A stretch of 64,000 bases of DNA, taken from positions 310,001 through 374,000 of IMG/VR virus record IMGVR_UViG_3300027899_000001, one strand, 5' to 3'. Positions 8,054 through 21,487 of the stretch are shown here, piece by piece (position 1 is the first letter of the stretch; each line of letters begins with the position of its first letter). The notes under the pieces are model-generated. The model was not told the DNA's origin and did no database searches. It saw only the letters and a list, made by a program, of their open reading frames with translations. The translations under genes and the position numbers were made by a program.

Positions 8054-10585
8054 TTACCTTAAAAATGTAACATCGCCAACTTTTTCGAAGTAATCACCAT
8101 TTATGTATCTTCCTGAGGCTCTCCATACATAAACTCCTTGAGGCGCAAGATTTCCATCTTCAAAATATCCATCCCAGCCTTTCATTAAATCTCTACTTTC
8201 ATAGATAAGAACTCCCCATCTATTAAATATTTGAAGATAATATTCTATGACATTTTCAAAATGAGGTCTAAAAACATAATCCATTTCTGAATATACTCCT
8301 TCTTGCCATTGTCCACCAGTTGGTCCTGAACCATTCCATTTAAAAGCATTTGGAAATTTTATAGTTCCTCCTGACCATTTAACAGTTATGGGTAAATTAC
8401 TTAATACATTATCACTGCATCCGTAATCATTTTTTGCATATAATGTAACCCAGTAAGAACCTTCATTCTCATATTTATGCCAAGGATTTATATCATAACT
8501 TAATTCGGTTCCATCTCCAAAATCCCATGCATAATAATCTGCGTACTGAGAATAATTATAAAATGTAACTATTTGAGTATTACTATAAATATCTTTAGGA
8601 TAATAATCAAATGATGCAATAGGACTTTGAAATACAGTAACCATTCCTTGGTGAAAAGAAGATCCTGCAATATTATATACAGTTAATCTTACAATATAAG
8701 AACCTGGAAGATTATAAGTATGTACAGGATTAAATTCATTAGAATAAGATCTATCTCCAAAATCCCATAAATATGATTCTCCATATACACTTAAATTTCT
8801 AAATGTAACTACCATTGGATTACATCCTACAGTATCTGGAGCAAAATAAGCTAAAGGAACAGGAGGCAATACAACTTGAATATGAATAGTATCAAATGTC
8901 GTGCATCCCCATTGATCAGGAGGAATAGTATATGTAACTACATGTTCTCCTATATCTGCAATTTTTGGATCAAAGGTGGAGCCCACAACTCCTATTCCAC
9001 TCCAAATTCCGCCTTCAGGTGTTGCATGTAATACTACAGATGGTCTATTAAGAAAAATAGTTCCGACTTGTTGTATTTCTATATTAGGAATAGGCATTAC
9101 AGTTACAATAGTGCTATCTACATCTTGGCAATCTGTATTTACAATATTATAGACTATTAAATGATCTCCAGGACCTGTAATTTCTGGATGAAATACATTT
9201 CCAATCATTCCTAATCCTGTCCAAATTCCACCTAAATCATGTGTATTTACTGTAATAGGCGTACTATTCACACATAAAGTATCTACAGGAGTTATCGTTG
9301 CATTCGGAGTTGCTACAGTTATAGTTGTTGTATCACTATTACTACATCCACTTACATTTATACTATAAATAATTCTATGATTTCCCGATCCCGCCAAAAT
9401 AGGATCAAATACATTTCCTACAACTCCTGCTCCTATCCATGTGCCTCCTGGATCATGTGCTACTAAAGTAACAGGCGCATCAGAAGAACATACTATACTT
9501 GGTGCAGATATCGTTGGATCAGGAATTGGCGATACTCTTATATATGTTGTATCACTATCACTGCATCCTTCTCCACTTGTTATTGTATGTATAATTCTAT
9601 GATTTCCTGGGCCTGCAACTGTAGGATTAAAAATATTTCCCGAAACTCCGGGTCCTGACCATTCTCCATTTGGAGACACACTTGTTAAAGTTACAGGATT
9701 TGCATTTGAACACATCGAATCAACAGGATTGATTGCTGCATCGGGATAAGGAACTATTAATATAATAGCAGTTGTAACCACTGGAGGAAAATCTCCATTT
9801 ACTTTATCTCTTGGTTGTCCGGGAATACTTGGGTCATCATAAGGATTACAATAATTCCAGTTTCGTAATGTTACTTGAAAATATTGTCCAACTAATTTAT
9901 CATTAGCTACATTCATTACATCTGAATAAACACCCGATCCTGTAACAGGACCAGGAAGAGTAATTATGCGAGCTGTATCTGGATACATTGTAGAATGTCC
10001 ATCTATTGTAACAGGAATTCCTGTCATAGTTATATCAGTTCCATAAATCCATTGTATCCATCTTGTATTAATATTTGGATTATCTCTTTCTTGAGGTGGA
10101 ACACAATTAAATAAAGTTAAATCTTGAAATCTAACATCTGCTCCATTTCCAAAGCATATTGGATAAACAGTAGGATCAATATGCATACGTCCACCATTAT
10201 GATTATCATCATCCCATACAGTTACTATTTGTTCTTGTGCTGAAGAAGTGCAAAGAACACCATTAACTCTAAGCATCGCTTGAGGATGATAATTACAAAC
10301 ATCTCCAGCTGACGTATAGGTATTAGTTGCCGTTGCTTGAAAAATACCAGGACCTACCATAACTGCTGGAACATCTACAACAGTACCATTATTCCAATCA
10401 AATTGAATACTTACAGGCGTACCAGCATCATTAACTCCAGTATAACTTACATTCCAAACTGCTATAACAGGAGAACATAATTTATCTGGAGTAATATTAT
10501 TAGCTTTAGAAAATATTGTACAAGTTTGCCCAAAAATATTAAGCGAAAGAAATGATAAAATTAAATATAGAAACCATTTTTTCAT
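8054..10585 (-). CDS. PKD-domain protein with T9SS type-B (gliding-motility) C-terminal sorting domain
   Basis: Signal peptide, SGxGV repeats, YLWDFGD PKD motifs, C-terminal IFNRWGVLIYES...GWDG...GVYVW. Confidence 0.85.
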   Translation of the reverse strand: MKKWFLYLILSFLSLNIFGQTCTIFSKANNITPDKLCSPVIAVWNVSYTGVNDAGTPVSIQFDWNNGTVVDVPAVMVGPGIFQATATNTYTSAGDVCNYHPQAMLRVNGVLCTSSAQEQIVTVWDDDNHNGGRMHIDPTVYPICFGNGADVRFQDLTLFNCVPPQERDNPNINTRWIQWIYGTDITMTGIPVTIDGHSTMYPDTARIITLPGPVTGSGVYSDVMNVANDKLVGQYFQVTLRNWNYCNPYDDPSIPGQPRDKVNGDFPPVVTTAIILIVPYPDAAINPVDSMCSNANPVTLTSVSPNGEWSGPGVSGNIFNPTVAGPGNHRIIHTITSGEGCSDSDTTYIRVSPIPDPTISAPSIVCSSDAPVTLVAHDPGGTWIGAGVVGNVFDPILAGSGNHRIIYSINVSGCSNSDTTTITVATPNATITPVDTLCVNSTPITVNTHDLGGIWTGLGMIGNVFHPEITGPGDHLIVYNIVNTDCQDVDSTIVTVMPIPNIEIQQVGTIFLNRPSVVLHATPEGGIWSGIGVVGSTFDPKIADIGEHVVTYTIPPDQWGCTTFDTIHIQVVLPPVPLAYFAPDTVGCNPMVVTFRNLSVYGESYLWDFGDRSYSNEFNPVHTYNLPGSYIVRLTVYNIAGSSFHQGMVTVFQSPIASFDYYPKDIYSNTQIVTFYNYSQYADYYAWDFGDGTELSYDINPWHKYENEGSYWVTLYAKNDYGCSDNVLSNLPITVKWSGGTIKFPNAFKWNGSGPTGGQWQEGVYSEMDYVFRPHFENVIEYYLQIFNRWGVLIYESRDLMKGWDGYFEDGNLAPQGVYVWRASGRYINGDYFEKVGDVTFLR

Positions 10586-10785
10586 TAAATTTCTTTAAAC
10601 TTTGTCATTTGAATAGGCTTAAGACCATCAAAGCGAATTGTATATTCATACCATGCTGGATGCATTCCACGAATTCTATCAGTAAGTTCTTCAGCTTTAT
10701 ATGCTTTTTTCCAAACTTCACTATCATTAATATGAGAATTCATTTGTTTATCAAATGTGGGGCTAATTACCTTTTCGTCTGTCAT
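10585..10785 (-). CDS. Hypothetical protein
   Basis: ORF track, abuts neighbours. Confidence 0.55.
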   Translation of the reverse strand: MTDEKVISPTFDKQMNSHINDSEVWKKAYKAEELTDRIRGMHPAWYEYTIRFDGLKPIQMTKFKEI

Positions 10786-10789
10786 GTTT

Positions 10790-11077
10790 CTATTGTTTTA
10801 AATGAATGATATTTTCTATTTTTTGTTTTAGAGTTATTTCGTGTCTATCTTTTCTTATGTAATTATTCCAAATGTATATTGATATTGTGAATACAAATAC
10901 TGTCACAATAAATACTTTAATAAGATACGGAACAATGCTAATAAGTTTCTTAAATTTTTGAGTAAGTTTTAAAAAGAAATGATCACTATGATAAATACTT
11001 GGATCACATTTATTAAATTTATATTTATTATCTTTAATAAAAGTTTCAATATTTTCTTCTGTCCATTCCATAATCAA
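10790..11077 (-). CDS. Hypothetical single-pass membrane protein
   Basis: ORF track. Confidence 0.55.
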   Translation of the reverse strand: MIMEWTEENIETFIKDNKYKFNKCDPSIYHSDHFFLKLTQKFKKLISIVPYLIKVFIVTVFVFTISIYIWNNYIRKDRHEITLKQKIENIIHLKQ

Positions 11078-11301
11078 TCTTTATAGTACAAATATAATTA
11101 AAATATATGAATAAATCATTAAAATGTTGTTAAAAAATTGTTAATGACTATTATATTATATTTATTCATCCTGTAATTCCAAAGGCTTTAAGAAAATATA
11201 AAACACCGGCAATAATTAGTATAATTACTATTATGCCAAATAATTTAAAGCATCCGCCTAAACAAGAACATCCACTTTCCATATAATATAGTTTTAATTT
11301 G

Positions 11302-11375
11302 AGGCCACAATCGGGATCGAACCGACTTCTCTGCGTTACGAAGGCAGAATCCTATGCCATCTAGACGATGCGGCC
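11302..11375 (-). tRNA. trnT-CGT: tRNA-Thr(CGT)
   Basis: Cloverleaf; loop TT-CGT-AA with C31-C39 mismatch; U73 as in the other Thr tRNAs here. Confidence 0.7.
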
Positions 11376-11384
11376 ATTTTTCGG

Positions 11385-11443
11385 ACGGGGCCCGCCTCCC
11401 ATTTAGGTGCCACGATTTTCGTGTCTTTAATAACCTGCCCCGT
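11385..11443 (-). ncRNA. Unidentified GC-rich structured spacer RNA
   Basis: ACGGGGC/GCCCCGT closing stem, AGGT/ACCT and CACG/CGTG inner helices. Confidence 0.35.
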
Positions 11444-11450
11444 ATCGGCG

Positions 11451-11533
11451 CGGAGAGCAGAGTACTCGAAACTCAGTCCTTGTAGACCCACTCGCTTTCC
11501 AGACGGTGGCAGACCCTATCTGCGTTACTCTCC
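11451..11533 (-). tRNA. trnS-GGA: tRNA-Ser(GGA)
   Basis: Long V-arm cloverleaf, loop CT-GGA-AA, G73. Confidence 0.8.
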
Positions 11534-11608
11534 ATAATCTCTCAGTGTATACATCGTTTCAGTAATACACTCATCAATATTGTTCCAATTGATGTTGAGA
11601 GAAGTTTG

Positions 11609-11693
11609 CGGAGAGAGCGGGTAACGATCCCGCTTGAGTATTGCCCCAGCCTCAGTTTAGCAAACTGGCCTATTACCTTCCTAGCCTCTCTCC
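11609..11693 (-). tRNA. trnS-GCT: tRNA-Ser(GCT)
   Basis: Loop TT-GCT-AA, long V-arm, atypical T-loop. Confidence 0.75.
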
Positions 11694-11697
11694 AATT

Positions 11698-11967
11698 TTA
11701 TCTTAGAAGATTCTTAATTATCATTGTTTTTGAATCTTCTAAAACTTTTTTAGTAAGTTTTATTACTTCATCAGCTTCTCCTTGTGATTCTTTAAGAAGT
11801 TGTTTATATTTTTCTACAGATTCATTTAAAAAAGTAATGTAATTATTTTTAACTTTATCAAGTTCATCCATAGCTTTTATTTTATCTCTAAGAGCTTCAA
11901 TCAATTCATCTTTTCTTTTGAATTCTGCCAAAAGGCTTTGTGTTAAATCATTGTTTGTCGAACTCAT
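11698..11967 (-). CDS. Hypothetical coiled-coil protein
   Basis: ORF track, fills gap between tRNAs. Confidence 0.6.
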   Translation of the reverse strand: MSSTNNDLTQSLLAEFKRKDELIEALRDKIKAMDELDKVKNNYITFLNESVEKYKQLLKESQGEADEVIKLTKKVLEDSKTMIIKNLLR

Positions 11968-11989
11968 TGTATCATATATTAAATGTTTG

Positions 11990-12079
11990 CGGAGTATAAA
12001 GGAATCGAACCCTCGGCGAACTACTGAACGCCGGCCTAGTTTTCGAGACTAGTTGTGCACCCATTGCACTCTACACTCC
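11990..12079 (-). tRNA. trnS-CGA: tRNA-Ser(CGA)
   Basis: CTAGT-CTCGAAA-ACTAG anticodon arm, long V-arm. Confidence 0.85.
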
Positions 12080-12339
12080 TAAATTTTCTTTAAAGGAAAA
12101 TGAATTAAAATTTTATCTTCATCCACTTCATTTAAAGATTTTTCATCTTTATCTTCCTCATCGATTACATATGCATTGCTATAAGCAAATTTTATGTATT
12201 CCATAGAGTTTTCATATGTTTTTCCTTTCTTCTCTAAAAAGTCAAACATATCGGATATCATTGCTTCACTACTTTTGTAACTTACAATTTCAAGAGTAAC
12301 TCTACCCACTAAATTTTTTTCATCTACAAATATTCTCAT
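12079..12339 (-). CDS. Hypothetical protein
   Basis: ORF track. Confidence 0.55.
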   Translation of the reverse strand: MRIFVDEKNLVGRVTLEIVSYKSSEAMISDMFDFLEKKGKTYENSMEYIKFAYSNAYVIDEEDKDEKSLNEVDEDKILIHFPLKKI

Positions 12340-12360
12340 ATTCTTATATTAAAAAAGTTT

Positions 12361-12450
12361 TGGCGGATGAGGTGGGGTTCGAACCCACGGACCACTTACG
12401 CGATCATTAGTTTTCAAGACTAACGCCATAGACCACTCGGCCACCCATCC
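12361..12450 (-). tRNA. trnS-TGA: tRNA-Ser(TGA)
   Basis: Canonical class II cloverleaf with encoded CCA. Confidence 0.95.
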
Positions 12451-12456
12451 AATTTG

Positions 12457-12528
12457 AGCCGAAAAAGGGTTTCGAACCCCCAACCTATAGTTTACAAAAC
12501 TATTGCTCTACCATTGAGCTACTTCGGC
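12457..12528 (-). tRNA. trnT-TGT: tRNA-Thr(TGT)
   Basis: ATAGT-TTTGTAA-ACTAT. Confidence 0.9.
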
Positions 12529-12535
12529 GTTTTTG

Positions 12536-12608
12536 AGCCCCCATGAGAATTCGAATCCCAGTCTTCGGTGTACAAAACCGACATAATTACCATCTATACG
12601 ATGGAGGC
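12536..12608 (-). tRNA. trnT-TGT: tRNA-Thr(TGT), second divergent copy
   Basis: TCGGT-TTTGTAC-ACCGA. Confidence 0.8.
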
Positions 12609-12616
12609 ATTTTTTG

Positions 12617-12688
12617 AGCCCTTACGCAGCTTCGAACTGCGAGTTCTACGATACCAACGTAGTGTTTTTCCTATTGAACTATAAGGGC
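12617..12688 (-). tRNA. trnT-GGT: tRNA-Thr(GGT)
   Basis: CTACG-TTGGTAT-CGTAG. Confidence 0.85.
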
Positions 12689-12699
12689 ATTAAAAATCG

Positions 12700-12776
12700 T
12701 TCCGAAGGAGGGGGTCGAACCCTCATGTAACCAATTACCCTTTCAACAGTGTATAAGACAGGGGGGATACTCCGGA
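12700..12776 (-). tRNA. D-armless tRNA-like RNA, anticodon TAT (Ile-AUA?)
   Basis: Acceptor TCCGGAG/CTTCGGA, perfect T-arm, loop CT-TAT-AC (imperfect stem) directly after acceptor, long extra segment. Confidence 0.55.
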
Positions 12777-12777
12777 G

Positions 12778-12894
12778 TGGAGCGTGTTCCTGGATTTGAA
12801 CCAAGACTTCCGCAATTACGAGTGCGGTGTTCTACAAAGGATTTTCTCGTGAGAAATGGTACCAATTTCCTTTCCTTCCTTAAACTACACACGC
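12778..12894 (-). tRNA. tRNA-Thr(CGT)-like gene with ~40-nt D-loop insertion and 8-nt anticodon loop
   Basis: Encoded CCA, T-arm CTTGG-TTCAAAT-CCAGG, stem CCGCA/TGCGG, D-stem GTTT/GAAC enclosing AAAGGA...TCCTTT hairpin. Confidence 0.55.
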
Positions 12895-12901
12895 ATTAAA
12901 A

Positions 12902-13102
12902 AATTAACTATGAGCATAGCCGCCATTCTGTTCTATTCCACCATTTGTCTATGCCTCAACCTTGTTATTATAGACCAGCTCACCGTCTAAACTATTTTGA
13001 GTTGCATCCTCGGCGGTTCAATCGATTATTAGTCTCCCTCCTTAAGCTGTGATGTGGCGAACTTCCTCACCTTTCGGCGCGATGGATCCTCGGTAGTTAA
13101 TT
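12902..13102 (-). ncRNA. rnpB: Minimal RNase P RNA (catalytic domain only)
   Basis: P1 ends pair; P2 TCCATC/GGTGGA; P3 GCC-GAAA-GGT; P4 GAGGAAG-T-TCGCCA with AACAGAA-TGGCGG-CT (bulged U); P5 CATC/GATG then CAA; P15 CTC/GAG with GGT; TAGACAAAT junction. Confidence 0.85.
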
Positions 13103-13361
13103 ATATTCAAAGAACACATTCTATTACAACATATAAAAGTCCGCAACATAAAACTGCTCCAATTGAAGCAAATACTAACGCTTCTTTCCATGATGCTTTA
13201 TTGATATATCTATAGGTAATTAAATTACCTGTAAACAATCCTAAAGTAAAAACTAGTATGTCTAATATGTCCATGACTTTAATTTTTTTATAATGTAAAT
13301 ATAAACATTATTTCTGAATTAAAAAAATATTTTGCCAATTATTTTCAAAGAACTTGTAAAT

Positions 13362-13387
13362 AAAAAAGGGAGCTAAAAAGCTCCCTT
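13362..13387 (-). terminator. Intrinsic terminator (attenuator of tRNA array 1)
   Basis: AAGGGAGC-TTTTTA-GCTCCCTT followed by T-run. Confidence 0.85.
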
Positions 13388-13411
13388 AATTTATGATACA
13401 CGAGAGCATAT

Positions 13412-13471
13412 TTATTCCGTACCTGTTGTTGAACTGGTTATTGATATCGATATGTTATTAATTGCTTTCAT
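13412..13471 (-). promoter_or_regulatory. Leader peptide MKAINNISISITSSTTGTE (attenuator 1)
   Basis: 19-codon ORF rich in ATA/TCN/AGT/ACN directly before terminator. Confidence 0.75.
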
Positions 13472-13518
13472 TGTATATTATATATCATACTATATTTAAA
13501 GTTTTCGATTACTTAATG

Positions 13519-14460
13519 CTAAATATAAGGTGTTGGTGTTATTTTCATTTTTCCAAATTTCTCTTCATATTTTGCTAATTTAGCTTGGCCATCTCCGTTT
13601 AATAAATAGGCTCCTGTTTTTTTATCTATATGTATTTTTGGATGAACTATATCTTTAATACCATCTCCCCAATATCCTACATTTGTTAATGGATGATAAC
13701 TTCCTTTTCCATAAGTTAATTCATACAAAAATTTAGAAAGTTCTTTATCACTGGTTACTGTATTTTCATTTATGTATTTTAAGACTCTATAAATTTTATA
13801 TCCATGAGGATATGATTGTCCCTGTTGTGATTTTTGAACTCCTAAAAATAATTTAATTTTATCAAGTTTTTTCTGATCTCTTGGATGAACTAATTCTGGT
13901 AATTCATCTATATGATCTCTTAAATATTGTATAATTTTGTCATGTTGTGCAACTTTTGAAAATAATCTAAAATTATAATCTGTTTGAAAAAGTGCATTAA
14001 TCATTCCAATTTTTAACTTATCTCCTCTTTCAATACATTTCTTAAATAAAGAAAAATTACCAGCTTTGCATGCTACCGTTAATTCTTCTTCAGGTGAAAG
14101 TGTTGCAAGAGTTCCTTCTAAATTTAAAACATAATAAGCTTTTTGAGATAAATCTTCAAATTTTGCGCCCCTTTGTATTAAAGTATCTACAAATTCATGC
14201 ATTTCATAAGAAAAAGAATTTTGTAATGCTCTTTGAACGTTATAATCAGAATGATGATTTATTATATATGAAATAAAATCTTTTTTTCTTTTATAAAAAC
14301 ATTGATCTAAAGCATCATTTATTTGATTTTTTATATCAATTCTTCTCCAAAGTTCTAAAGTATCTAACCAATTCTGTATTTTATGATCCATGCCTATTCC
14401 CATATCATAAATAGGATCGGACTCTTCAGTAAATTTTTCGAATATACGCCAAGCTTTCAT
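13519..14460 (-). CDS. DPIxDMGIG-motif protein with ankyrin-like helical repeats
   Basis: N-terminal motif; LTVACKAGNFSLFKKCIERG segment. Confidence 0.7.
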   Translation of the reverse strand: MKAWRIFEKFTEESDPIYDMGIGMDHKIQNWLDTLELWRRIDIKNQINDALDQCFYKRKKDFISYIINHHSDYNVQRALQNSFSYEMHEFVDTLIQRGAKFEDLSQKAYYVLNLEGTLATLSPEEELTVACKAGNFSLFKKCIERGDKLKIGMINALFQTDYNFRLFSKVAQHDKIIQYLRDHIDELPELVHPRDQKKLDKIKLFLGVQKSQQGQSYPHGYKIYRVLKYINENTVTSDKELSKFLYELTYGKGSYHPLTNVGYWGDGIKDIVHPKIHIDKKTGAYLLNGDGQAKLAKYEEKFGKMKITPTPYI

Positions 14461-14476
14461 ATAAGATATATTTATT

Positions 14477-14797
14477 TTATATATCTTCTGTGGAAATAGT
14501 CTTTATTCTTTCAGCTATTTGTTGATTTTTAATTGTGAATACATTTCTTGTAGCTATCCAAGCATCTGCGGGATTAACTTCTGAAGTTAAAAATGTAGTA
14601 TACATTGGATAATAGAAATCAGTTAATTCTTGTTTTTCTTCTTCTAATAAAGGTAAATGACCAAATAAAATAAGAAAATCTTCTAATGGCATTATTTCAT
14701 CAACATTTATTTCGTCCCAGCTTTTCATTTTTATGTAATTTGTATTTTTTGTAAAATCTTGTATTTGAATAATCATACATATCAGGATTATAATCAA
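14477..14797 (-). CDS. Hypothetical protein (true start probably MKSW)
   Basis: ORF track. Confidence 0.5.
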   Translation of the reverse strand: MIIILICMIIQIQDFTKNTNYIKMKSWDEINVDEIMPLEDFLILFGHLPLLEEEKQELTDFYYPMYTTFLTSEVNPADAWIATRNVFTIKNQQIAERIKTISTEDI

Positions 14798-14912
14798 ACC
14801 AGTTTATTCCATCATAAAAACAAATAATTATCATATTAAATAATGCAACTGTTGTAATTAATATTGAAATTGCTAACCAAATTACTGCTATTATGATAAT
14901 TATTTTATCCAT
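14700..14912 (-). CDS. Small membrane protein
   Basis: ORF track, hydrophobic N-terminus. Confidence 0.5.
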   Translation of the reverse strand: MDKIIIIIAVIWLAISILITTVALFNMIIICFYDGINWFDYNPDMYDYSNTRFYKKYKLHKNEKLGRNKC

Positions 14913-14913
14913 G

Positions 14914-15150
14914 TCATTCTACTTTTGGTTTTCCACCTAATCTGCGAGTTATTCTTCCTTTTGTTAAATCATAAGGACTCATTTCAATTAGAACCTTATC
15001 TCCGGGAAGTATCTGTATCGAATTCATACGAATTTTTCCAGATAAGTGAGTTACTATTATATGTCCATTTGTTAATTGAGATCTAAAAATAGAATTTCCA
15101 AGTGCTTCTGTTATTACACCTTCTATTTCTACGTTTTGTTGCTTTGACAT
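14914..15150 (-). CDS. infA: Translation initiation factor IF-1
   Basis: [10 protein letters not shown]...[34 protein letters not shown]. Confidence 0.95.
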
Positions 15151-15153
15151 ATG

Positions 15154-15366
15154 TTATTGTTTTGAATAAAGTTTTACCCACTCAGGTTTTCCGTGATGCC
15201 ATAATCCACATACTTTACATTGATAAACAGTATAATCACTGTGCACAATACCTTGTCCTATAAGAAAATCAAGAGAATCTTGTGCGTATTTCTGTGAGCT
15301 AAATGATATTCTACGAACTTGATTAGGAATTTCTCCTGCTACGCATAAACCTTTTTCGCCTTTCAT
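15154..15366 (-). CDS. Small Zn-finger protein
   Basis: YQCKVCGLWHHG. Confidence 0.6.
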   Translation of the reverse strand: MKGEKGLCVAGEIPNQVRRISFSSQKYAQDSLDFLIGQGIVHSDYTVYQCKVCGLWHHGKPEWVKLYSKQ

Positions 15367-15368
15367 AA

Positions 15369-15629
15369 TTAATCTTTTTTATCTATGTTTGGTACTGAGT
15401 TTCCGCCTTTAATTAAAATTCCCATTATCCATGTTAAACATACTGATGTCCACCAAGGAAGTTTAGCAAGAATTATTCCAGATGCTACTGCTTTAGGAAA
15501 AAGAACAGGAAATGTATAGGGCCAAATCCAATATACAATTGTTCCACCAAGAAATGCTGCTATAGCAATTAAAGCTGCCGCAAAAACTATTGCTCCAATT
15601 GCTACAAATAATTTTAAAAATCCTTCCAT
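15369..15629 (-). CDS. Membrane protein
   Basis: Hydrophobic ORF. Confidence 0.6.
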   Translation of the reverse strand: MEGFLKLFVAIGAIVFAAALIAIAAFLGGTIVYWIWPYTFPVLFPKAVASGIILAKLPWWTSVCLTWIMGILIKGGNSVPNIDKKD

Positions 15630-15683
15630 GTTTAATTTTTTAGTAAGTAAATATAATACTAATTTCTGATATAAAAAAATATT

Positions 15684-16268
15684 TTAGTATTTTTTTTCAA
15701 CGTATTCAATTAATTTTTTAATATTTTTATCTGCAGATGTTCCAAATAAGCCTATACATTTATTTAAAAATTCTATTCGTTTTTCTTTATATACTTTATC
15801 AGAAGCATACGAATTTTCTTTTCTTATTAATTTTTCATTTTTTAATAAGCCTTCATATCCTTTTTTAAATTTAGAATTATCAGCTTCCCAAAAAATTCGT
15901 TCTAATGTTAACGTAGGTCTTTTACGATGTTTTGTAGTTTCTATTAAATCACAAACAACTTTTTTCATTTTAAGATCTTTTCCTATATAAGAATCTAAGA
16001 AAAATTGTATAGATTGATCTTCATTATCAGTTTTCTTTGGGTCATATATTGCATCATGAAAAAATGCAGCAAGTAAAAGTGCTTGTTTTTCATAAACGTT
16101 TAATCTTCGAAATTCTGGAGTTTCTCCTATATCTTCAATAATATCTCGAAGATGTATTTCATTATGATAAAATCTATCTGGCTTAGTCCAAAAGAATTTT
16201 AGAAGTTTAATAGATTGCTGTGATACATATAGATTTAATGTATCATTAAATGTGATAAATGGGTTCAT
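15684..16268 (-). CDS. HD-superfamily metal-dependent phosphohydrolase
   Basis: RFYHNEIH, AAFFHDAIYDP, DNEDQS. Confidence 0.85.
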   Translation of the reverse strand: MNPFITFNDTLNLYVSQQSIKLLKFFWTKPDRFYHNEIHLRDIIEDIGETPEFRRLNVYEKQALLLAAFFHDAIYDPKKTDNEDQSIQFFLDSYIGKDLKMKKVVCDLIETTKHRKRPTLTLERIFWEADNSKFKKGYEGLLKNEKLIRKENSYASDKVYKEKRIEFLNKCIGLFGTSADKNIKKLIEYVEKKY

Positions 16269-16319
16269 TATGTTATTTAATTAACTAGTATCTTTTTCAC
16301 ATTGACAATTTAAAAAGAG

Positions 16320-16390
16320 AGCGCATGATCAGAATCGAACTGACGTCGAAAGCTTGGAAGGCTCCCGCACTACCACTGTGCTACACGCGC
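16320..16390 (-). tRNA. trnG-TCC: tRNA-Gly(TCC)
   Basis: Loop CT-TCC-AA, U73. Confidence 0.85.
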
Positions 16391-16590
16391 TTGGTAATAT
16401 AATATCTAATTCTCCAGAATGCTCTTTTATACCAGGGAATAGATTTCCATTTATTATGATATTCAAACCATGTTTTTACTTGATCAAAAGAAAGAGTTTC
16501 AGCAGGTAAAGTATCAATACTTATTGGACCCCCTTCAGGTGTGGGAAATATAATTATTTCGCCTGTTTTTCTATCTTGTATTTCTAACAT
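16381..16590 (-). CDS. Hypothetical protein; stop lies inside tRNA-Gly 5' end
   Basis: ORF track. Confidence 0.5.
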   Translation of the reverse strand: MLEIQDRKTGEIIIFPTPEGGPISIDTLPAETLSFDQVKTWFEYHNKWKSIPWYKRAFWRIRYYITKRV

Positions 16591-16605
16591 AGTTTACTAT
16601 ATTTG

Positions 16606-16676
16606 AGCGCCACAGGGTAATCGAAACCCCATGTTCAGACTGGCAATCTGACGTAATACCTTTATACCAATGGCGC
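16606..16676 (-). tRNA. trnG-GCC: tRNA-Gly(GCC)
   Basis: TCAGA-TTGCCAG-TCTGA. Confidence 0.85.
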
Positions 16677-16679
16677 ATT

Positions 16680-17354
16680 TTACCAAAAAATAATTTCATA
16701 TATAATTAAAGGAAATTTTTCTTTAAATGCTATTTCTTTTAACTTTGTTTCATTTAATGTAACATTCCAAGAATTTTTTATTTCTACGACTTTATTATCA
16801 TTTATTAAAAAATCTGGTTGGTATGTTCTATTATTTCCCTTTTCGTCTTTATATTTAATTTTAAAATTTTCAGGTTCGTACGTAAATTTTAAAATTTCAT
16901 TGTTTTTATTTATATCATCAATATATATTTTTTCATATGAAGATCTAACATTAAATTGTTTTTTACCTGTATGTTTTTCTGAATAAACCTTAATAAGTTT
17001 TGTATTTTTAGGACTTTTTCCATACATTCCATTTTTTTCTCCTGAATTTTTTCCTAACATTTTTTTACTTATTGCTTTTCGTGCTTCAAGACTTATATTT
17101 TTTGAAGAACATGATCGTGAACAATATTTTTGATGTCTTTTATTCCAACGAATTTTAAATTTTTTTCCACATTTTTTACATATATTAACTACATCTGAAT
17201 GTGAATTTAATTTTCTTTTTTTACGTATTTTATCATTTATCAAAGAACGTTTTTCTTTTGTACTGAAACTTTTTGCGCATTTAGAAGAACAAAATCTTCC
17301 AGAACCATATAATCCATTGTGCTCTTTTTTACAAGTTTCACAAATATACTTCAT
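16680..17354 (-). CDS. Free-standing endonuclease, Cys-repeat DNA-binding region plus PD-(D/E)xK (TnsA-like) domain
   Basis: FCSSKCA, YCSRSC; RSSYE...YQPDFL...VEIK. Confidence 0.75.
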   Translation of the reverse strand: MKYICETCKKEHNGLYGSGRFCSSKCAKSFSTKEKRSLINDKIRKKRKLNSHSDVVNICKKCGKKFKIRWNKRHQKYCSRSCSSKNISLEARKAISKKMLGKNSGEKNGMYGKSPKNTKLIKVYSEKHTGKKQFNVRSSYEKIYIDDINKNNEILKFTYEPENFKIKYKDEKGNNRTYQPDFLINDNKVVEIKNSWNVTLNETKLKEIAFKEKFPLIIYEIIFW

Positions 17355-17409
17355 TGTTTTATTTTATATATTCATGAAATAATTTGAACTTGTGTCTTTA
17401 ACCTTGAGC

Positions 17410-17664
17410 TTAATATTTAGTACCACCTATCATTCCTCCGCCATATCGACGAAATTTATATGGGTGGTATGTAATATTCTTTTTATATTTTCTGTATGCT
17501 TTTCTCTTTGTCTTTTTGTTATGTTTAGAATGAAATTCTTTATTTCTTCCTAACTCTGTGTTTTCTAATAACATTAAGTTCTTTCTTTCATTATTAGAAC
17601 AATGTTTAGTTGAAGAACACCCTACTAGTAATAATATAAAGATAAGTATAAAAAGTTTTCGCAC
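17410..17664 (-). CDS. Putative lipoprotein
   Basis: LLVGC lipobox. Confidence 0.55.
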   Translation of the reverse strand: MRKLFILIFILLLVGCSSTKHCSNNERKNLMLLENTELGRNKEFHSKHNKKTKRKAYRKYKKNITYHPYKFRRYGGGMIGGTKY

Positions 17665-17674
17665 TATATAGATT

Positions 17675-17887
17675 TTATTTTAGTTGTTCTAGTATTTTTT
17701 CTATTTGTTTTTGTACATCATCAATTTCTTTTGATATACGTTCTAATTCAATTTGTTCTTCTGGCTCTGTTCTCCAACCATATAAATCTGCAAGTCTATT
17801 AGTTTCAAATATAAAGTTTTCTAATAACTTAGCTTTTAATTTAAGAAATCTCGCTAATGTTTCGTAATTAATAATCTTATCTTCCAT
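17675..17887 (-). CDS. Hypothetical protein
   Basis: ORF track. Confidence 0.55.
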   Translation of the reverse strand: MEDKIINYETLARFLKLKAKLLENFIFETNRLADLYGWRTEPEEQIELERISKEIDDVQKQIEKILEQLK

Positions 17888-17902
17888 ATATTTTTTATAT
17901 AT

Positions 17903-18208
17903 TCAAATCTTCCATTTTGTCTTTCGATTATGTTTCCACGTTCTATACATCCTTACTTGATGTTGCCAAATCAATTTAGATTTCCAATATCCTCTATACC
18001 CTCTGTTGTGTTTTTGATATTCTCCATATAATTCTGGATAAGGATCATCGTCTACTACTCTCAATATATGATATATTCGACGATTAGCTGTTGTTTTCAT
18101 TAATTTATCTCTTTTCATGGTACCATTGTTTTTTTCTTTTACTTTGGTCTTTCCATGAAGTAGAAAAATGTCTTCCCATCCATCTGTTACAACCTTCGTG
18201 AAGTCCAC
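17903..18208 (-). CDS. Small basic hypothetical protein
   Basis: ORF track; shares TTxNRRxY with next ORF. Confidence 0.45.
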   Translation of the reverse strand: MDFTKVVTDGWEDIFLLHGKTKVKEKNNGTMKRDKLMKTTANRRIYHILRVVDDDPYPELYGEYQKHNRGYRGYWKSKLIWQHQVRMYRTWKHNRKTKWKI

Positions 18209-18296
18209 AGAGATGACAAGAAGTTAATCTAAGAATTTGTATACGAGAAAGTCTATATACTCTTCTATTAGTTGTTGTTCTAAAATTGTCATTCAT
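18105..18296 (-). CDS. Small basic hypothetical protein
   Basis: ORF track. Confidence 0.5.
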   Translation of the reverse strand: MNDNFRTTTNRRVYRLSRIQILRLTSCHLCGLHEGCNRWMGRHFSTSWKDQSKRKKQWYHEKR

Positions 18297-18413
18297 AATC
18301 TTTAGGTTATTTTACCTAAAGACCATCATATGTTTTTTTCATATTGTTTATTTAATTGTGTAAATATAATAAAAATTTCTGATATATTAAAATCTTTATC
18401 TATATATTTTTTG

Positions 18414-18486
18414 TAACTCCACTGAGATTCGAACTCAGATCAAGAATTTAGGAAATTCTTATTCTAATCCATTGAAATATGGAGTC
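18414..18486 (-). tRNA. trnR-CCT: tRNA-Arg(CCT)
   Basis: AGAAT-TTCCTAA-ATTCT. Confidence 0.85.
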
Positions 18487-18487
18487 A

Positions 18488-19471
18488 TTAAAATTCAGGA
18501 CATGGAAGAGCTCTCATTCGTTGTTTTCCATTTCTTTCAAAAAATCTATTAAATTCATAGATAAATGAAATTTCATGAGCTCCAACTGTTGCTCTATTGA
18601 GACTAGAAATTGTAAAATCGTAACTATAGCCAACAAATATATTTTTTGTTTTTAATCCTGCTAAACCTATAACTGCATCTCCTGGTTGATTTGATAATCC
18701 TGGAATGCCTCTATACCAAAGTCCTAAAATAAGTGGAGGTCTTGCATAATAAACTCCTACATCTGCTTGATAAAACTTTCCTTGGGTTTGTAAATTAACT
18801 GCTAAAGAAACAACATCTTGTCGTTCTATTTTAAGTCTTTGTTTCTTTATTATTTGTATTCCTCCATATAAGTTTACCTTTACTGGAACTCTTGATTCAT
18901 CTCCATAAAAAGAAATTTTAGGAGTTAACATATGATCTACTGTTACTCCACTCCATATTCTATCATTATACGCTATTATCGATGAAGCAAAGTCTATACT
19001 TGCTGAATTATCAAAAGTTGGTGGAATAACTGGAGGAGTATTGTTTATATTACTATTAAATATAAGTTTGTTAATATCTAATCCTAAATATTGAAATTTG
19101 AAATTAACACCAGGCCTTACATGCCATGTATTATTAATTTTAATATCATAAGAATATAAAGCTCCTATTGTTGTATTACTTAAATCTCCTGATCCTGCTA
19201 CATCGTATGATGCAATTATTCCTATTCCTGAATTATATTGAGGTAACGCTTTATCAAATGAAACACTATAAGTGTTATAGATATTTGATATTCCAGGCCA
19301 CTGATTTCTATAATTCATTGTTAATCTATAATCTTCTGTAGCACCTGCAAAAGATGGCGCTAACCATAACTTGTTGGCATAAAATTGTGAATACGTTGGA
19401 TCTTGTGCAAAAGTATTTGAATAGATTACAAATAACAGAATAAATGAACATATGTATTTTACAATACGCAT
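18488..19471 (-). CDS. PorP/SprF family T9SS outer-membrane protein
   Basis: QDPTYSQFY...APSFAG...YRNQWPG...YSYDFTIS...HEISFIY. Confidence 0.9.
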   Translation of the reverse strand: MRIVKYICSFILLFVIYSNTFAQDPTYSQFYANKLWLAPSFAGATEDYRLTMNYRNQWPGISNIYNTYSVSFDKALPQYNSGIGIIASYDVAGSGDLSNTTIGALYSYDIKINNTWHVRPGVNFKFQYLGLDINKLIFNSNINNTPPVIPPTFDNSASIDFASSIIAYNDRIWSGVTVDHMLTPKISFYGDESRVPVKVNLYGGIQIIKKQRLKIERQDVVSLAVNLQTQGKFYQADVGVYYARPPLILGLWYRGIPGLSNQPGDAVIGLAGLKTKNIFVGYSYDFTISSLNRATVGAHEISFIYEFNRFFERNGKQRMRALPCPEF

Positions 19472-20085
19472 TTTATTATATTTAATATATTATCGTTATA
19501 TACTTCTAAATAATGTAATTCTATAATTTTCCATCCCTCGTTTTCAATTAAATTATGTCTATTTTGATAATAGGGTTTTAATGTTTTATTTTTATAATAA
19601 TGTTGATTGCCATTAACTTCTATTCCTAATTTTAATTCAGGAAACGCTATATCTATTGAAAAATATCTATTTGGAAATAATGGTTGATATTCTTCTTCGA
19701 ATGTTATCTTATTTTTCTTTAATATATCTTTTAAGTATTCACATGGTATCGAAATAAACTTTGTATTTTTTCTCCAGGGATGTTTTTCGGGGTTTTCTAA
19801 TAAATACTGTTTTCTTTTATTAGACATTTGAATTTTTGTTTTTTCACTGTGGGTTTTTCCTTTATATGAAGGAGAATGTACTTTAATTCTTTTTTCTTTA
19901 TATGATTTTGATAAAGTGTTTGCTTGTTTTTTTCTCTGCTCCGGTGTTATAGTAGATCTTACATAATTAAGGCCATTCACGTATATATTATATTTAGGAT
20001 TTAATTTACACCATCTACTATGATTAGCTTTTTGAGATATTGTTAAATTTTCAAATTTTTTATTACAGTATTTACAAGATGTCAT
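19459..20085 (-). CDS. Free-standing DUF559/Vsr-like endonuclease
   Basis: FSIDIAFPELKLGIEVNGNQHY. Confidence 0.75.
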   Translation of the reverse strand: MTSCKYCNKKFENLTISQKANHSRWCKLNPKYNIYVNGLNYVRSTITPEQRKKQANTLSKSYKEKRIKVHSPSYKGKTHSEKTKIQMSNKRKQYLLENPEKHPWRKNTKFISIPCEYLKDILKKNKITFEEEYQPLFPNRYFSIDIAFPELKLGIEVNGNQHYYKNKTLKPYYQNRHNLIENEGWKIIELHYLEVYNDNILNIIKCVL

Positions 20086-20133
20086 AGTTTATTATATATA
20101 TTCATGGATAAAATATGAGATTTATATATTTAG

Positions 20134-20208
20134 AGCCCTGGAAGGGATTCGAACCCTCATCGTTCCGTTACATTACTACAGCTTAGAAGACTGCTATGAT
20201 ACCAGGGC
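20134..20208 (-). tRNA. D-armless tRNA-like RNA, anticodon TCT (Arg-AGA?)
   Basis: Acceptor GCCCTGG/CCAGGGC, loop CT-TCT-AA right after acceptor, perfect T-arm. Confidence 0.6.
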
Positions 20209-20298
20209 AAATTTTGTATCATATGTGATACTTTGGAGTGAAAAACTACCATTAGTGTATCATATATAATTCATTAGTATCATAAAAGATACTTTTTG

Positions 20299-20373
20299 TA
20301 CGTCCCAAGGGATTCGAACCCTTAATCTCAAGTTTCGTAGACTTGTGCATTTATCCAGTTGTGCTAGGGACGT
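20299..20373 (-). tRNA. trnR-ACG: tRNA-Arg(ACG)
   Basis: CAAGT-CTACGAA-ACTTG. Confidence 0.9.
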
Positions 20374-20557
20374 ATTAATAATGTGAAAGTTTACAGTGAT
20401 TTTTTATATCCTGATAAATTCCAGATATAAAAAAATACATGAATAATGTTGGTGGTATAGTTATTCCTACAACGAAAATAAGAAACCAGAAAACTATTAT
20501 TATCATCAGAATTGCGAGTAATACGTTTATCATGGCAGTGTTTGTTTAATTATATAT

Positions 20558-21421
20558 TTATTTTTTTATTATCTTTAAAACTTGAATTATATTTCCTTTA
20601 CTATAATCAGTTATAAGTAATATGTATAAACCGGATTTATAATTTAACATATCTATTAATACTGTTTCGCTCATCATTTTTTCTTCATATAATAATGAAG
20701 CTTTTTGATCATATATTCTAAATACTATTCCTGTATTATCTTTTATTGATAAATTTAATTTATCAGTAACAGGATTAGGCCAAACATTAATATCAATTTT
20801 TATACTATCAACTGTAATAAATTCTTTAATAACAGGAATTAAAAGTAATTTTGTGCCATTTATTGTTTCAAATGTAACTTCATCTGACATTACATAATCT
20901 CTGCAATCTGCCTCTGTTATTTGGCCTTCGGTTAAAGAAAGAAATAAAGTTTTATTACTTCCTATTCCATTATAGATATTAAGCTTAAATTGAGTATCAA
21001 ATGTTGTAATAATAGGTTCAACAAATAAGTATTGTCCAGTAAATAAATCGCTCCCTAATTCAGCTTTTCTTAATGATGCATAATAAATCGTATCTACAGG
21101 ACCTTCATATTTGTATATAATTAAATTTGTATTTCCTGTAGTTTTAAATTCAAATGTTACTATATCATTTGGAAAACCAAAATTTATTATCTTAAAATCA
21201 TCTGGTTGTTTAAGACCATCCCAAACTCTCGCCGATAATAAAACCTTTGACCTGCAGATTATTCCTTGATTTTCATACCATGTACTATTTATTGTTCCTT
21301 CTGTTCCAAATCTTATTCTTCTAAAATTGGATTTATTACCTTTCAAAGAATCATATACAATATCTTGCGCAGATATTGATAAAGACAATAACCAAAAAAG
21401 AATAATAAGAAATACTTTCAC
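20558..21421 (-). CDS. Secreted protein with T9SS type-A C-terminal sorting domain
   Basis: Signal peptide; VWPNPVTDKL...IYDQKA...SGLYIL...KIIKK. Confidence 0.85.
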   Translation of the reverse strand: MKVFLIILFWLLSLSISAQDIVYDSLKGNKSNFRRIRFGTEGTINSTWYENQGIICRSKVLLSARVWDGLKQPDDFKIINFGFPNDIVTFEFKTTGNTNLIIYKYEGPVDTIYYASLRKAELGSDLFTGQYLFVEPIITTFDTQFKLNIYNGIGSNKTLFLSLTEGQITEADCRDYVMSDEVTFETINGTKLLLIPVIKEFITVDSIKIDINVWPNPVTDKLNLSIKDNTGIVFRIYDQKASLLYEEKMMSETVLIDMLNYKSGLYILLITDYSKGNIIQVLKIIKK

Positions 21422-21487
21422 ACATCGGAATAATTTTTAGTATATACTATATATTCCTATTTAAGTTTTCTTCCTAATAATGACACT

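What the first reader, a model, noticed from the sequence alone, without database searches (positions are those of the whole stretch)
8054..21421. Phage encodes its own T9SS cargo and PorP/SprF adaptor
Seen: an 843-aa PKD protein with type-B CTD (8054), a PorP/SprF protein (18488) and a type-A CTD protein (20558). Established: type-B CTD substrates need a cognate PorP/SprF partner for surface display. Inference: the phage uses host T9SS to display its own adhesin or receptor mask on infected cells.
Basis: partly seen in the sequence, partly recalled or inferred. Interest (0 to 1): 0.6.

Follow-up and report, generated by a model that had tools for sequence, protein, structure and literature searches.

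The report
Jumbo phage carries matched T9SS cargo and shuttle
A 405-kb phage of uncultured Bacteroidales carries its own copy of a host surface protein, the outer-membrane shuttle that this kind of protein needs for export by the host's type IX secretion system, and a second, phage-only secreted protein, so it is probably equipped to change the surface of the cell it infects.

Summary
8054-10585 encodes an 843-aa PKD protein with a type-B (CHU_C) C-terminal domain (CTD). 18488-19471 encodes a full-length PorP/SprF protein. 20558-21421 encodes a 287-aa type-A CTD protein. All three have Sec signal peptides.

The record is a real 405-kb myovirus with terminase, sheath, capsid and protease genes. 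The genes are not host contamination: their GC3 is 0.12 against 0.30-0.56 in bacterial orthologues, three assemblies agree, depth is even, and PorP and the cargo sit in syntenic positions in a second, diverged phage.

New here:
- Cargo and PorP are both host-derived (61-72% identical to Bacteroidales orthologues), and each forms a phage clade.
- In a complete Bacteroidales genome with 11 PorP paralogues and 16 compared type-B CTDs, the phage PorP matches one paralogue only.
- That paralogue's adjacent cargo gene carries the same unusual CTD subclass as the phage cargo, so the two look like a cognate pair.
- The type-A protein belongs to a small family seen only in phage-like contexts.
- A host-derived three-gene exopolysaccharide module lies next to the cargo gene.

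"Receptor mask" is speculation: the cargo keeps all strongly conserved head-domain residues of the host protein.

The parts
8054..10585 (-). 843-aa T9SS type-B cargo (P0001). Layout: Sec signal peptide (1-20), conserved about 260-aa N-terminal head, four about 73-aa Ig-like repeats (about 281-575), two PKD domains (about 576-735), and a divergent type-B CTD (about 736-843).
   Evidence: Pfam PKD_4, PKD and CHU_C are above their cut-offs. Full-length 843-aa orthologues at 64-72% identity occur in many Bacteroidales MAGs. It keeps 301 of 306 family-invariant columns. It forms a phage clade with P0134 and P0130, SH-aLRT 100. In the model, the repeats and PKD domains fold confidently and the head does not.
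18488..19471 (-). 327-aa PorP/SprF-family outer-membrane shuttle (P0002), with a signal peptide and a C-terminal ...PCPEF.
   Evidence: PF11751 E 8e-59 over the full model; TIGR03519 210 bits. It is 69-70% identical to the PorP of a second phage. It is 58-65% identical to one orthologue group present in at least 588 Bacteroidales species genomes. It is 61% identical to one of the 11 paralogues in complete genome G002 and at most 26% to the other ten. The two phage PorPs form a clade, SH-aLRT 99.
20558..21421 (-). 287-aa phage-specific T9SS type-A cargo (P0003): signal peptide, beta-sandwich passenger (about 20-210) and type-A CTD (213-287).
   Evidence: PF18962 and TIGR04183 are above their cut-offs. 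The CTD fold matches 8qb1_A. There are 17 relatives by word search and 15 hits for the passenger alone among 1.84 billion representatives. Every informative context is phage-like. The passenger was not found in 201 Bacteroidales genomes.
6303..7097 (-). YaiO-family outer-membrane beta-barrel. First gene of an adjacent host-derived exopolysaccharide module; its link to the T9SS genes is inferred only.
   Evidence: PF19413 E 2.2e-23; TIGR04390 65.5 bits. It is 33-35% identical to the first gene of a collinear bacterial three-gene operon.
5089..6354 (-). 421-aa HEAT-repeat protein, middle gene of the module.
   Evidence: PF13646 HEAT_2 33.6 bits. It is 41% identical to the middle gene of the bacterial operon.
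3651..5078 (-). 475-aa family-2 glycosyltransferase resembling processive synthases of the PgaC/IcaA type, last gene of the module.
   Evidence: Glyco_tranf_2_3, Glycos_transf_2 and Chitin_synth_2 match. TIGR03937 E 2.4e-38, below its cut-off. It is 58% identical to the third gene of the bacterial operon.

Best explanation
[quoted passage not shown] - A matched type-B pair captured from the host lineage: an 843-aa all-beta surface protein and the PorP/SprF shuttle of the subfamily that serves its unusual CTD subclass.
- A phage-specific 287-aa type-A cargo.

Inferred mechanism:
1. All three proteins cross the inner membrane by Sec.
2. PorP is inserted in the outer membrane as a beta-barrel.
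3. The host translocon exports the 843-aa protein through its type-B CTD and hands it to the phage PorP, which holds it on the cell surface.
4. The type-A protein uses the host's PorV route.

The phage probably brings its own shuttle because type-B cargo needs its cognate shuttle, and the host copy would limit export once the phage makes much cargo or shuts off host transcription.

Likely purpose: to keep up or raise display of a host-type surface (adhesin-like) protein and add a phage-specific one during a long infection. This would be part of a wider remodelling of the envelope that also includes the neighbouring host-derived exopolysaccharide synthase module.

Shown: the genes, their signals, their origin, the pairing logic and their retention. 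Inferred: secretion, binding and purpose.
For: Domains and signal peptides.

The record is a phage: hallmark genes, including capsid and protease genes just upstream of the window; IMG/VR lists direct terminal repeats and CheckV gives 100% completeness.

The genes belong to the phage:
- GC3 is 0.12-0.125, against 0.30-0.56 in bacterial orthologues and a mean of 0.17 over phage ORFs.
- A separate 378-kb assembly has the same gene order.
- One 18.7-kb Logan contig spans window 7841 to about 26594 with no differences, at the same depth as its neighbour (36.2 against 36.5).

Retention in a second phage:
- A second phage about 60% diverged (G001) has PorP at the syntenic end of the tRNA region, 70% identical.
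- A 9.8-kb contig from the same metagenome, collinear with window 16268-8054, carries the cargo orthologue at 68.6% identity.
- Both genes form supported phage clades inside the bacterial families.
- PorP keeps 155 of 185 bacterial-invariant columns and the cargo keeps 301 of 306. None of 159 strongly conserved head-domain columns is changed in all three phage-clade members.

Pairing, in complete genome G002:
- The phage PorP is 61% identical to one of 11 paralogues and at most 26% to the rest.
- The phage CTD is 66% identical to the 843-aa orthologue's CTD.
- It is 44-46% identical to only two other CTDs: the gene directly upstream of that PorP paralogue, and one orphan.
- These four CTDs share one motif-A replacement.

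Literature: orphan type-B cargoes share a shuttle that is encoded elsewhere, and co-producing the shuttle aids secretion (PMC12618676). PorP binds PG1035 and SprF binds SprB (PMC9143113).
Against: - There is no direct evidence of expression, secretion or binding.
- The CTD fails the NCBIfam type-B cut-off, and the Pfam match covers only model positions 24-69 of 86.
- Motif A, which was required for SprB secretion in F. johnsoniae, is replaced.
- Cargo and PorP are 8 kb apart in the phage, not adjacent.
- In bacteria the 843-aa orthologue is an orphan, so its shuttle is inferred from CTD similarity alone.
- The head domain has no assigned function; the model is poor there and the Atlas search gives only Ig/PKD-like leads.
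- The host is unknown.
Confidence: 0.55

Rival explanations
1. Superinfection exclusion or receptor replacement. The host PorP-adhesin complex, or another T9SS-displayed protein, is the phage's receptor. The phage-made PorP and cargo would displace or cover it, so that infected cells and their debris stop adsorbing phage.
For: The phage PorPs sit on a long stem (0.55, against about 0.05 for bacterial tips). They share 16 changes at positions that are at least 95% conserved in bacteria, including a cluster at residues 62-65. That could reflect escape from recognition. An exopolysaccharide module next door could also cover receptors. From my own knowledge, not checked here: T9SS and gliding mutants of Flavobacterium are often phage-resistant.
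Against: The cargo is not altered: 301 of 306 invariant columns are kept and no strongly conserved head-domain column is changed. A mask or decoy would be expected to differ from the receptor. Nothing is known of this phage's receptor. Faster evolution of PorP may only reflect the phage's mutation rate and AT pressure.
Confidence: 0.2
2. PorP acts mainly on the secretion machine rather than as an anchor. An excess of phage-made shuttle would compete at the host translocon and redirect or block export of host cargo; the 843-aa protein would be secondary.
For: PorP is the more diverged of the two genes and is kept in both phages. Two other huge phages carry three or four type-B CTD genes but no PorP, so cargo and shuttle need not travel together.
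Against: The cargo is co-retained in the same phage lineage at the same divergence (68.6% against 69-70%) and under strong constraint. The known role of PorP-like proteins is cargo-specific.
Confidence: 0.08
3. The PKD/Ig-rich proteins are virion parts (decoration or fibre), and the CTD-like domains are only beta-sandwich modules.
For: Ig-like and PKD domains are common on phage particles (my own knowledge). The capsid and protease genes lie a few kb upstream of the window.
Against: All three proteins have Sec signal peptides, which would take them out of the cytoplasm where virions assemble. PorP is an outer-membrane barrel family. The cargo is a full-length orthologue of a bacterial protein.
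Confidence: 0.04
4. Host DNA misassembled into the phage contig, or recent non-functional passenger genes.
For: Two of the three genes have close bacterial orthologues.
Against: GC3 has shifted to the phage's value. Three assemblies agree and depth is even. The genes are embedded among phage tRNAs and homing-endonuclease-like genes on the same strand. Syntenic orthologues in a diverged phage form phage clades. The reading frames are intact and invariant residues are conserved.
Confidence: 0.02

Closest known systems
Cognate type-B CTD cargo and PorP/SprF shuttle pairs of Bacteroidota (SprB-SprF, Fjoh_3952-Fjoh_3951, the orphan shuttle Fjoh_1677, PorP-PG1035)
   Same: [quoted passage not shown] The phage PorP is an orthologue of a bacterial PorP that lies directly downstream of a cargo gene with the same CTD subclass. 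The arrangement in which an orphan cargo is served by a shuttle encoded elsewhere has a precedent in Fjoh_1677.
   Different: This pair is encoded by a virus. Cargo and shuttle are 8 kb apart, separated by tRNAs and endonuclease-like genes. The CTD subclass lacks the canonical motif A. Binding has not been shown.
Cryophage: phage-encoded T9SS type-A cargo proteins (Bellas et al. 2020, PMC7468147)
   Same: A phage of a Bacteroidota host encodes proteins with T9SS sorting domains, presumed to use the host system. P0003 is of this kind.
   Different: Cryophage cargoes are type A only, and the three named are an endoglucanase, a GH39 glycoside hydrolase and a PA14-domain protein. No shuttle or other T9SS component was reported there. 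Here there is also a type-B cargo with its PorP/SprF shuttle, and the type-A passenger is a small beta-sandwich protein from a phage-only family.
Host-derived auxiliary genes of large phages (for example cyanophage psbA) and phage-encoded outer-membrane proteins such as lambda Lom or the PA-2 Lc porin (my own knowledge, not checked here)
   Same: A host gene is captured, shifted to the phage's base composition and kept under purifying selection. Its product acts in the host envelope during infection.
   Different: Here the captured unit is a substrate and shuttle pair for a secretion system, not an enzyme or a single porin.
Type-B CTD genes in two huge phages of about 640 kb (LR745206.1, LR756502.1)
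   Same: Each record holds three or four CHU_C matches above the Pfam cut-off.
   Different: No PorP_SprF was found in either record with PF11751. They would depend on host shuttles.

Membership tests
PorP/SprF family T9SS membrane protein (PF11751, TIGR03519) | Full-length HMM match above the curated cut-offs | tested here: met
   PF11751 199.8 bits against 22.3, model positions 3-273 of 273. TIGR03519 210.4 bits against 90.55.
PorP/SprF family T9SS membrane protein (PF11751, TIGR03519) | Export signals of an outer-membrane barrel: Sec signal peptide and C-terminal aromatic residue | tested here: met
   The N-terminus is hydrophobic and ends ...TFA before Q. The C-terminus is ...PCPEF, invariant across the 16 aligned orthologues. 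This was read by eye; no signal-peptide predictor was run.
PorP/SprF family T9SS membrane protein (PF11751, TIGR03519) | Genetic linkage to a type-B CTD cargo gene | tested here: inconclusive
   In the phage the cargo gene is 8 kb away. In bacteria the orthologous PorP lies directly downstream of a PKD-PKD-CTD gene of the same CTD subclass.
PorP/SprF family T9SS membrane protein (PF11751, TIGR03519) | Binds its cognate type-B CTD | not testable with these tools
No solved relative exists by sequence.
T9SS type-B sorting domain (PF13585 CHU_C, TIGR04131) | C-terminal HMM match above the curated cut-off | tested here: inconclusive
   Pfam is met (34.3 and 38.7 bits against 27) but covers only model positions 23-24 to 69 of 86. 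NCBIfam is not met (21.1 against 35).
T9SS type-B sorting domain (PF13585 CHU_C, TIGR04131) | Conserved sequence blocks in the last 100 residues (the paper's motifs A-E; its figure is not held, so I matched blocks by eye) | tested here: inconclusive
   Compared with 12 canonical CTDs of G002, the IFNRWG-like, WDG, GVYxW-like and terminal G-x-V-x-hydrophobic-basic blocks are present. The TPNGDGxND-like block is replaced by an N..G plus P(T/S)GG insertion. The 843-aa orthologue, the PorP-adjacent 460-aa protein and one orphan share this replacement.
T9SS type-B sorting domain (PF13585 CHU_C, TIGR04131) | N-terminal Sec signal peptide | tested here: met
   A hydrophobic N-terminus is followed by ...FG before Q. 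Read by eye.
T9SS type-A sorting domain (PF18962, TIGR04183) | C-terminal HMM match above the cut-off, and the CTD fold | tested here: met
   PF18962 30.3 and 33.8 bits against 27. TIGR04183 23.1 against 23, which is marginal. The modelled C-terminal domain matches the solved mirolase CTD 8qb1_A (probability 1.00, TM 0.73 by target, rmsd 2.1 Å).
T9SS type-A sorting domain (PF18962, TIGR04183) | PorV-dependent export and removal of the CTD by PorU | not testable with these tools
   Needs experiment.
Tailed jumbo phage (myovirus) | Hallmark genes and a complete genome | tested here: met
   PHROGs matches: terminase large subunit (E 2e-46), tail sheath (E 2e-91), major head protein and head maturation protease. 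The record has 405,016 bp; IMG/VR lists direct terminal repeats and CheckV gives 100% completeness. The repeat itself is not present in the sequence held.

The most novel reading that the evidence does not exclude
The phage-made PorP and cargo pair, together with the neighbouring exopolysaccharide module and the phage-only type-A protein, is a dedicated surface-conversion system. It would replace or cover the host's own PorP-anchored adhesin complex, which would be the phage's receptor, and so give superinfection exclusion through a hijacked secretion system. This would make PorP/SprF shuttles a battleground between Bacteroidota and their phages.
Probability: 0.15. Interest if true: 0.8.

Novelty: new variant of a known kind. 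Interest (0 to 1): 0.62.

Why it matters
Phages were known to carry T9SS type-A cargo (Cryophage). In the paper libraries, INPHARED and IMG/VR searched here, I found no virus reported or seen to encode a T9SS component, apart from this phage lineage.

A virus that brings both a type-B substrate and its matching shuttle matters for three reasons:
- It shows that shuttle supply limits type-B export enough to be worth carrying on a phage genome.
- It offers a natural, diverged cargo and shuttle pair for studying the still unsolved specificity code of type-B CTDs. Its CTD subclass lacks the canonical motif A.
- It adds a route, with the adjacent host-derived exopolysaccharide operon, by which jumbo phages may rebuild the surface of abundant uncultured Bacteroidales in freshwater sediments, peat and soils.

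Tried and rejected
No verdict.
- Misassembly or host contamination: rejected.
- The 1911-aa beta-helix protein next to PorP in the second phage as its cargo: rejected. It has no CHU_C match and is a homologue of the 5523-aa giant protein of G000.
- Phage PorP as the core PorP of a porKLMN operon: not supported. In the two bacterial contexts read, its orthologue sits between a PKD-CTD gene and an OmpH gene, downstream of an ECF sigma factor gene.
- Function of the cargo's head domain: the Pfam and NCBIfam scans of the whole 843-aa protein matched nothing in the head (residues about 21-280). AlphaFold gave pLDDT below 50 for residues 114-276. The Atlas search gave only Ig/PKD-like leads.
- Function of the P0003 passenger: Foldseek gave only generic Fn3-like tandem matches with low TM, and the Atlas search gave nothing.
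- Wider search for viral PorP: only the second phage in IMG/VR, and one weak hit (22.5% identity) on a 13-kb faecal 'Bacteriophage sp.' record in INPHARED that I did not examine further.
- Stop-codon recoding: no signal for TAG or TGA.
- A solved PorP structure by sequence: none.
- RNA evidence: no RNA run holds the stretch.

Full report
**What is there.** The window is 28% GC and almost all of its ORFs lie on the minus strand. It holds 39 tRNA genes by ARAGORN and 36 by Rfam.
- 8054-10585 (-) encodes an 843-aa protein with two PKD domains and a C-terminal CHU_C, the type-B CTD (Pfam 34.3 bits against cut-off 27).
- 18488-19471 (-) encodes a 327-aa protein that matches PorP_SprF over the whole model (E 8e-59; TIGR03519 210 bits against 90.6).
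- 20558-21421 (-) encodes a 287-aa protein with Por_Secre_tail, the type-A CTD (30.3 bits against 27; TIGR04183 23.1 against 23).

All three begin with a hydrophobic signal peptide followed by Gln. From my own knowledge this is the usual signal-peptidase context in Bacteroidota. Each family occurs once in the whole genome. One weakness: the type-B CTD fails the NCBIfam cut-off (21.1 against 35), and the Pfam match covers only the middle of the model.

**It is a phage, and the genes belong to it.** The window is bases 310001-374000 of a 405,016-bp IMG/VR virus record. IMG/VR lists direct terminal repeats and CheckV estimates 100% completeness. The repeat is not in the sequence held. PHROGs finds a terminase large subunit, a tail sheath, a major head protein and a head maturation protease. 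The last two lie 1-5 kb upstream of the window. Table 11 gives 91% coding coverage, and there is no sign of TAG or TGA recoding.

Four lines of evidence speak against a host-derived misassembly:
- GC3 of the three genes is 0.12-0.125. Bacterial orthologues have 0.30-0.56 and phage ORFs average 0.17.
- A separate 378-kb ENA assembly has the same order: type-A gene, endonuclease-like gene, PorP, then the 843-aa gene.
- Logan's contigs of the one public run that holds the stretch (a freshwater metagenome, probably the source sample) include a single 18.7-kb contig. It covers window 7841 to about 26594 without a difference, at depth 36.2; the neighbouring contig has 36.5.
- A second, diverged phage has the same genes in the same places, as described next.

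**A second phage.** IMG/VR contig 3300032053_000050 (G001) is 72 kb, 18% complete and 27.5% GC. It is collinear with G000 positions 385 kb down to 328 kb, with protein identities of about 35-82%. PorP (70% identical) sits at the end of the tRNA region in both phages. After PorP the contig continues into homologues of the G000 structural block at 10.6-36 kb. The 1911-aa protein that follows PorP there is a homologue of a 5523-aa giant protein of G000 and has no CHU_C, so it is not PorP's cargo.

A 9.8-kb contig from the same metagenome (27.6% GC) is collinear with window 16268-8054. It ends with an 843-aa orthologue of the cargo at 68.6% identity. I cannot prove that this contig and G001 are one genome. 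Either way, the cargo occurs in a second phage context at the same divergence as PorP.

**Where the genes came from.**
- *PorP.* It has thousands of relatives at 58-65% identity. They form one tight orthologue group (mean pairwise identity 83% among 14 aligned bacterial members). The group is present in at least 588 species genomes of uncultured Bacteroidales from fens, peat, permafrost, lake sediment, soil and digesters. Rooted with paralogues, the two phage PorPs form a clade (SH-aLRT 99) on a long stem inside this group.
- *The 843-aa protein.* It has full-length orthologues, mostly of exactly 843 aa, at 64-72% identity in the same kind of genomes. P0001, the second-phage copy P0134 and a short-contig sequence P0130 form a clade with support 100.

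So each gene was most likely captured once, before these phages diverged, and then kept.

Constraint is strong. PorP keeps 155 of 185 bacterial-invariant columns. The cargo keeps 301 of 306. Of 159 head-domain columns that are at least 95% conserved in bacteria, none is changed in all three phage-clade members.

**Are they a cognate pair?** In the two bacterial contexts read, the 843-aa orthologue is an orphan with no PorP next to it. The PorP orthologue, in contrast, lies directly downstream of a 444-460-aa PKD-PKD-CTD gene. The local order is ECF sigma factor gene, PKD-CTD gene, PorP, OmpH. Residues 587-843 of the phage cargo are 39% identical to that neighbour (E 4e-48).

I tested specificity in the complete 4.99-Mb genome G002 (OY970276.1). 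It has 11 PorP_SprF paralogues and 18 CHU_C matches, and eight of the paralogues have a CHU_C gene directly upstream. I compared the last 105 residues of 16 of those CTDs.
- The phage PorP is 61% identical to one paralogue and at most 26% to the other ten.
- The phage CTD is 66% identical to the CTD of the 843-aa orthologue.
- It is 44-46% identical to just two others: the 460-aa gene upstream of that same PorP paralogue, and a 6815-aa orphan.
- It is at most 35% identical, over partial lengths, to the remaining twelve.

These four CTDs share one signature. The canonical TPNGDGxND-like block is replaced by an N..G plus P(T/S)GG insertion, while the IFNRWG, WDG, GVYxW and GDVT(F/L)L blocks are kept.

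The published rule is that each type-B cargo needs its own PorP/SprF shuttle, and that orphan cargoes can share a shuttle encoded elsewhere (PMC12618676). PorP binds PG1035 and SprF binds SprB (PMC9143113). On that basis the phage carries the shuttle subfamily that matches its cargo's CTD subclass. This is inference from genomes.

**The type-A protein is a different case.** It has 17 relatives by word search. An exhaustive search of 1.84 billion representatives with the passenger alone (residues 20-210) found 15 hits. Ten of them have E-values up to 1e-10, and nine of those are 277-290 aa long. Every informative context is phage-like:
- this phage;
- a 167-kb circular VirSorter contig with RecT-like, ligase, chaperonin and ribonucleotide reductase genes;
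- two contigs of about 10-12 kb full of small ORFs, one of them with S21 and IF-1 genes.

In 201 genomes of G002's order, nearly all listed matches cover only the CTD region (from about residue 170-210) and none reaches the first 100 residues of the passenger. INPHARED has no hit. The model (pLDDT 72) shows beta-sandwich domains. The last one superposes on the solved CTD of mirolase; the passenger has only generic Fn3-like similarity.

**Neighbourhood.** Downstream of the cargo gene lie a guanylate kinase gene and then three genes: a YaiO-family outer-membrane barrel, a HEAT-repeat protein and a processive family-2 glycosyltransferase. In two of the five candidate-host genomes the same three genes form a collinear operon, at 34%, 41% and 58% identity. 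The phage therefore carries a second host-derived envelope module, probably a synthase-dependent exopolysaccharide system. From my own knowledge the combination resembles E. coli yaiO-yaiP. That it acts together with the T9SS genes is only a suggestion from position.

**How it most likely works.**
- *Shown:* intact genes, export signals, origin, subclass matching and co-retention.
- *Inferred:* Sec export; insertion of PorP in the outer membrane; export of the cargo by the host translocon; hand-over to and anchoring by the phage PorP; and export of the type-A protein through the host's PorV route.

Because the cargo is constrained like its host orthologue, I favour 'maintain or boost a host-type surface protein and add a phage-specific one' (0.55) over 'mask the receptor' (0.2). 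The faster-evolving PorP and the exopolysaccharide module keep the exclusion idea alive.

**Comparison and novelty.** Phage-encoded type-A cargo is published (Cryophage, PMC7468147). Two deposited phages of about 640 kb hold three or four CHU_C genes each but no PorP_SprF. Five full-text searches found no report of a phage-encoded PorP/SprF, and IMG/VR pattern scans found this PorP subfamily only in the second phage. These searches are not exhaustive. I rate the finding a new variant of a known kind: a virus that encodes a T9SS shuttle together with its matched type-B substrate.

**Limits.** The host is unidentified. There are no expression data. The run that was laid is probably the source sample, so it is not independent. 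The motif comparison was made by eye against CTDs of one genome. The trees used the quick method.

Noticed in passing
window 3651-7097 (-): A three-gene module (YaiO-family outer-membrane barrel, HEAT-repeat protein, PgaC/IcaA-like family-2 glycosyltransferase). It is collinear with a bacterial operon in two candidate-host genomes at 34%, 41% and 58% identity, and is probably a phage-borne exopolysaccharide synthase and export system.
   Followed up: partly
window 43926-43999 (-): A tRNA with anticodon CTA, which would read TAG (ARAGORN calls it Pyl; Rfam tRNA 59.8 bits). The genome shows no sign of TAG recoding: only two TAG joins of long frames, and 51 of 513 ORFs end in TAG.
   Followed up: partly
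window 3179-51128: A very large tRNA set (39 genes by ARAGORN) in several arrays on one strand. Endonuclease-like genes are interspersed: TnsA/Endo I-like at 16680-17354, RAP/DUF559-like at 19459-20085 (overlapping the PorP start by 13 bases), and DUF559 at 48563-49366.
   Followed up: no
window 14914-15150 (-): A 78-aa translation initiation factor IF-1 homologue (PF01176, E 5.5e-23). It is conserved at 70% identity in the second phage contig L136. An IF-1 gene also lies near the P0003 relative on L139.
   Followed up: no
window 30737-31951 and 34539-35474 (-): Genes for nicotinate phosphoribosyltransferase and NAD synthase, an NAD salvage pair.
   Followed up: no
window 36814-38517 (-): A 567-aa protein with a TROVE (Ro60-like) domain, 77% identical in the second phage. 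I did not look for a partner Y-like RNA; the Rfam gathering scan lists only tRNAs.
   Followed up: no
window 55583-57142 (-) and 53311-54087 (-): An SPFH/Band 7 (flotillin-like) protein of 519 aa and a papain-family cysteine protease of 258 aa.
   Followed up: no
window 7262-8007 (-): A guanylate kinase gene (7510-8007) and an 81-aa ORF with a weak right-handed beta-helix match (7262-7507) lie between the cargo gene and the exopolysaccharide module.
   Followed up: no
LR745206.1 and LR756502.1 (L134, L135): Two deposited uncultured phages of about 640 kb each hold three or four CHU_C (type-B CTD) matches above the Pfam cut-off but no PorP_SprF. Type-B cargo in huge phages seems wider than this lineage.
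   Followed up: partly
L002 9455-9754; G001 53644-60414: In the second phage ARAGORN calls a permuted tmRNA that overlaps two tRNA calls (doubtful). PorP there is followed directly by a 1911-aa signal-peptide-bearing beta-helix protein that is homologous to a 5523-aa giant protein of G000 (10592-27163). Gene order therefore differs between the two phages at this point.
   Followed up: partly
L003 7884-12966; L004: In Bacteroidales the PorP orthologue sits in a conserved cluster: ECF sigma factor, 444-aa PKD-PKD-CTD protein, PorP, OmpH, and a 420-aa protein with weak family-2 glycosyltransferase matches. The role of this cluster is unknown.
   Followed up: no
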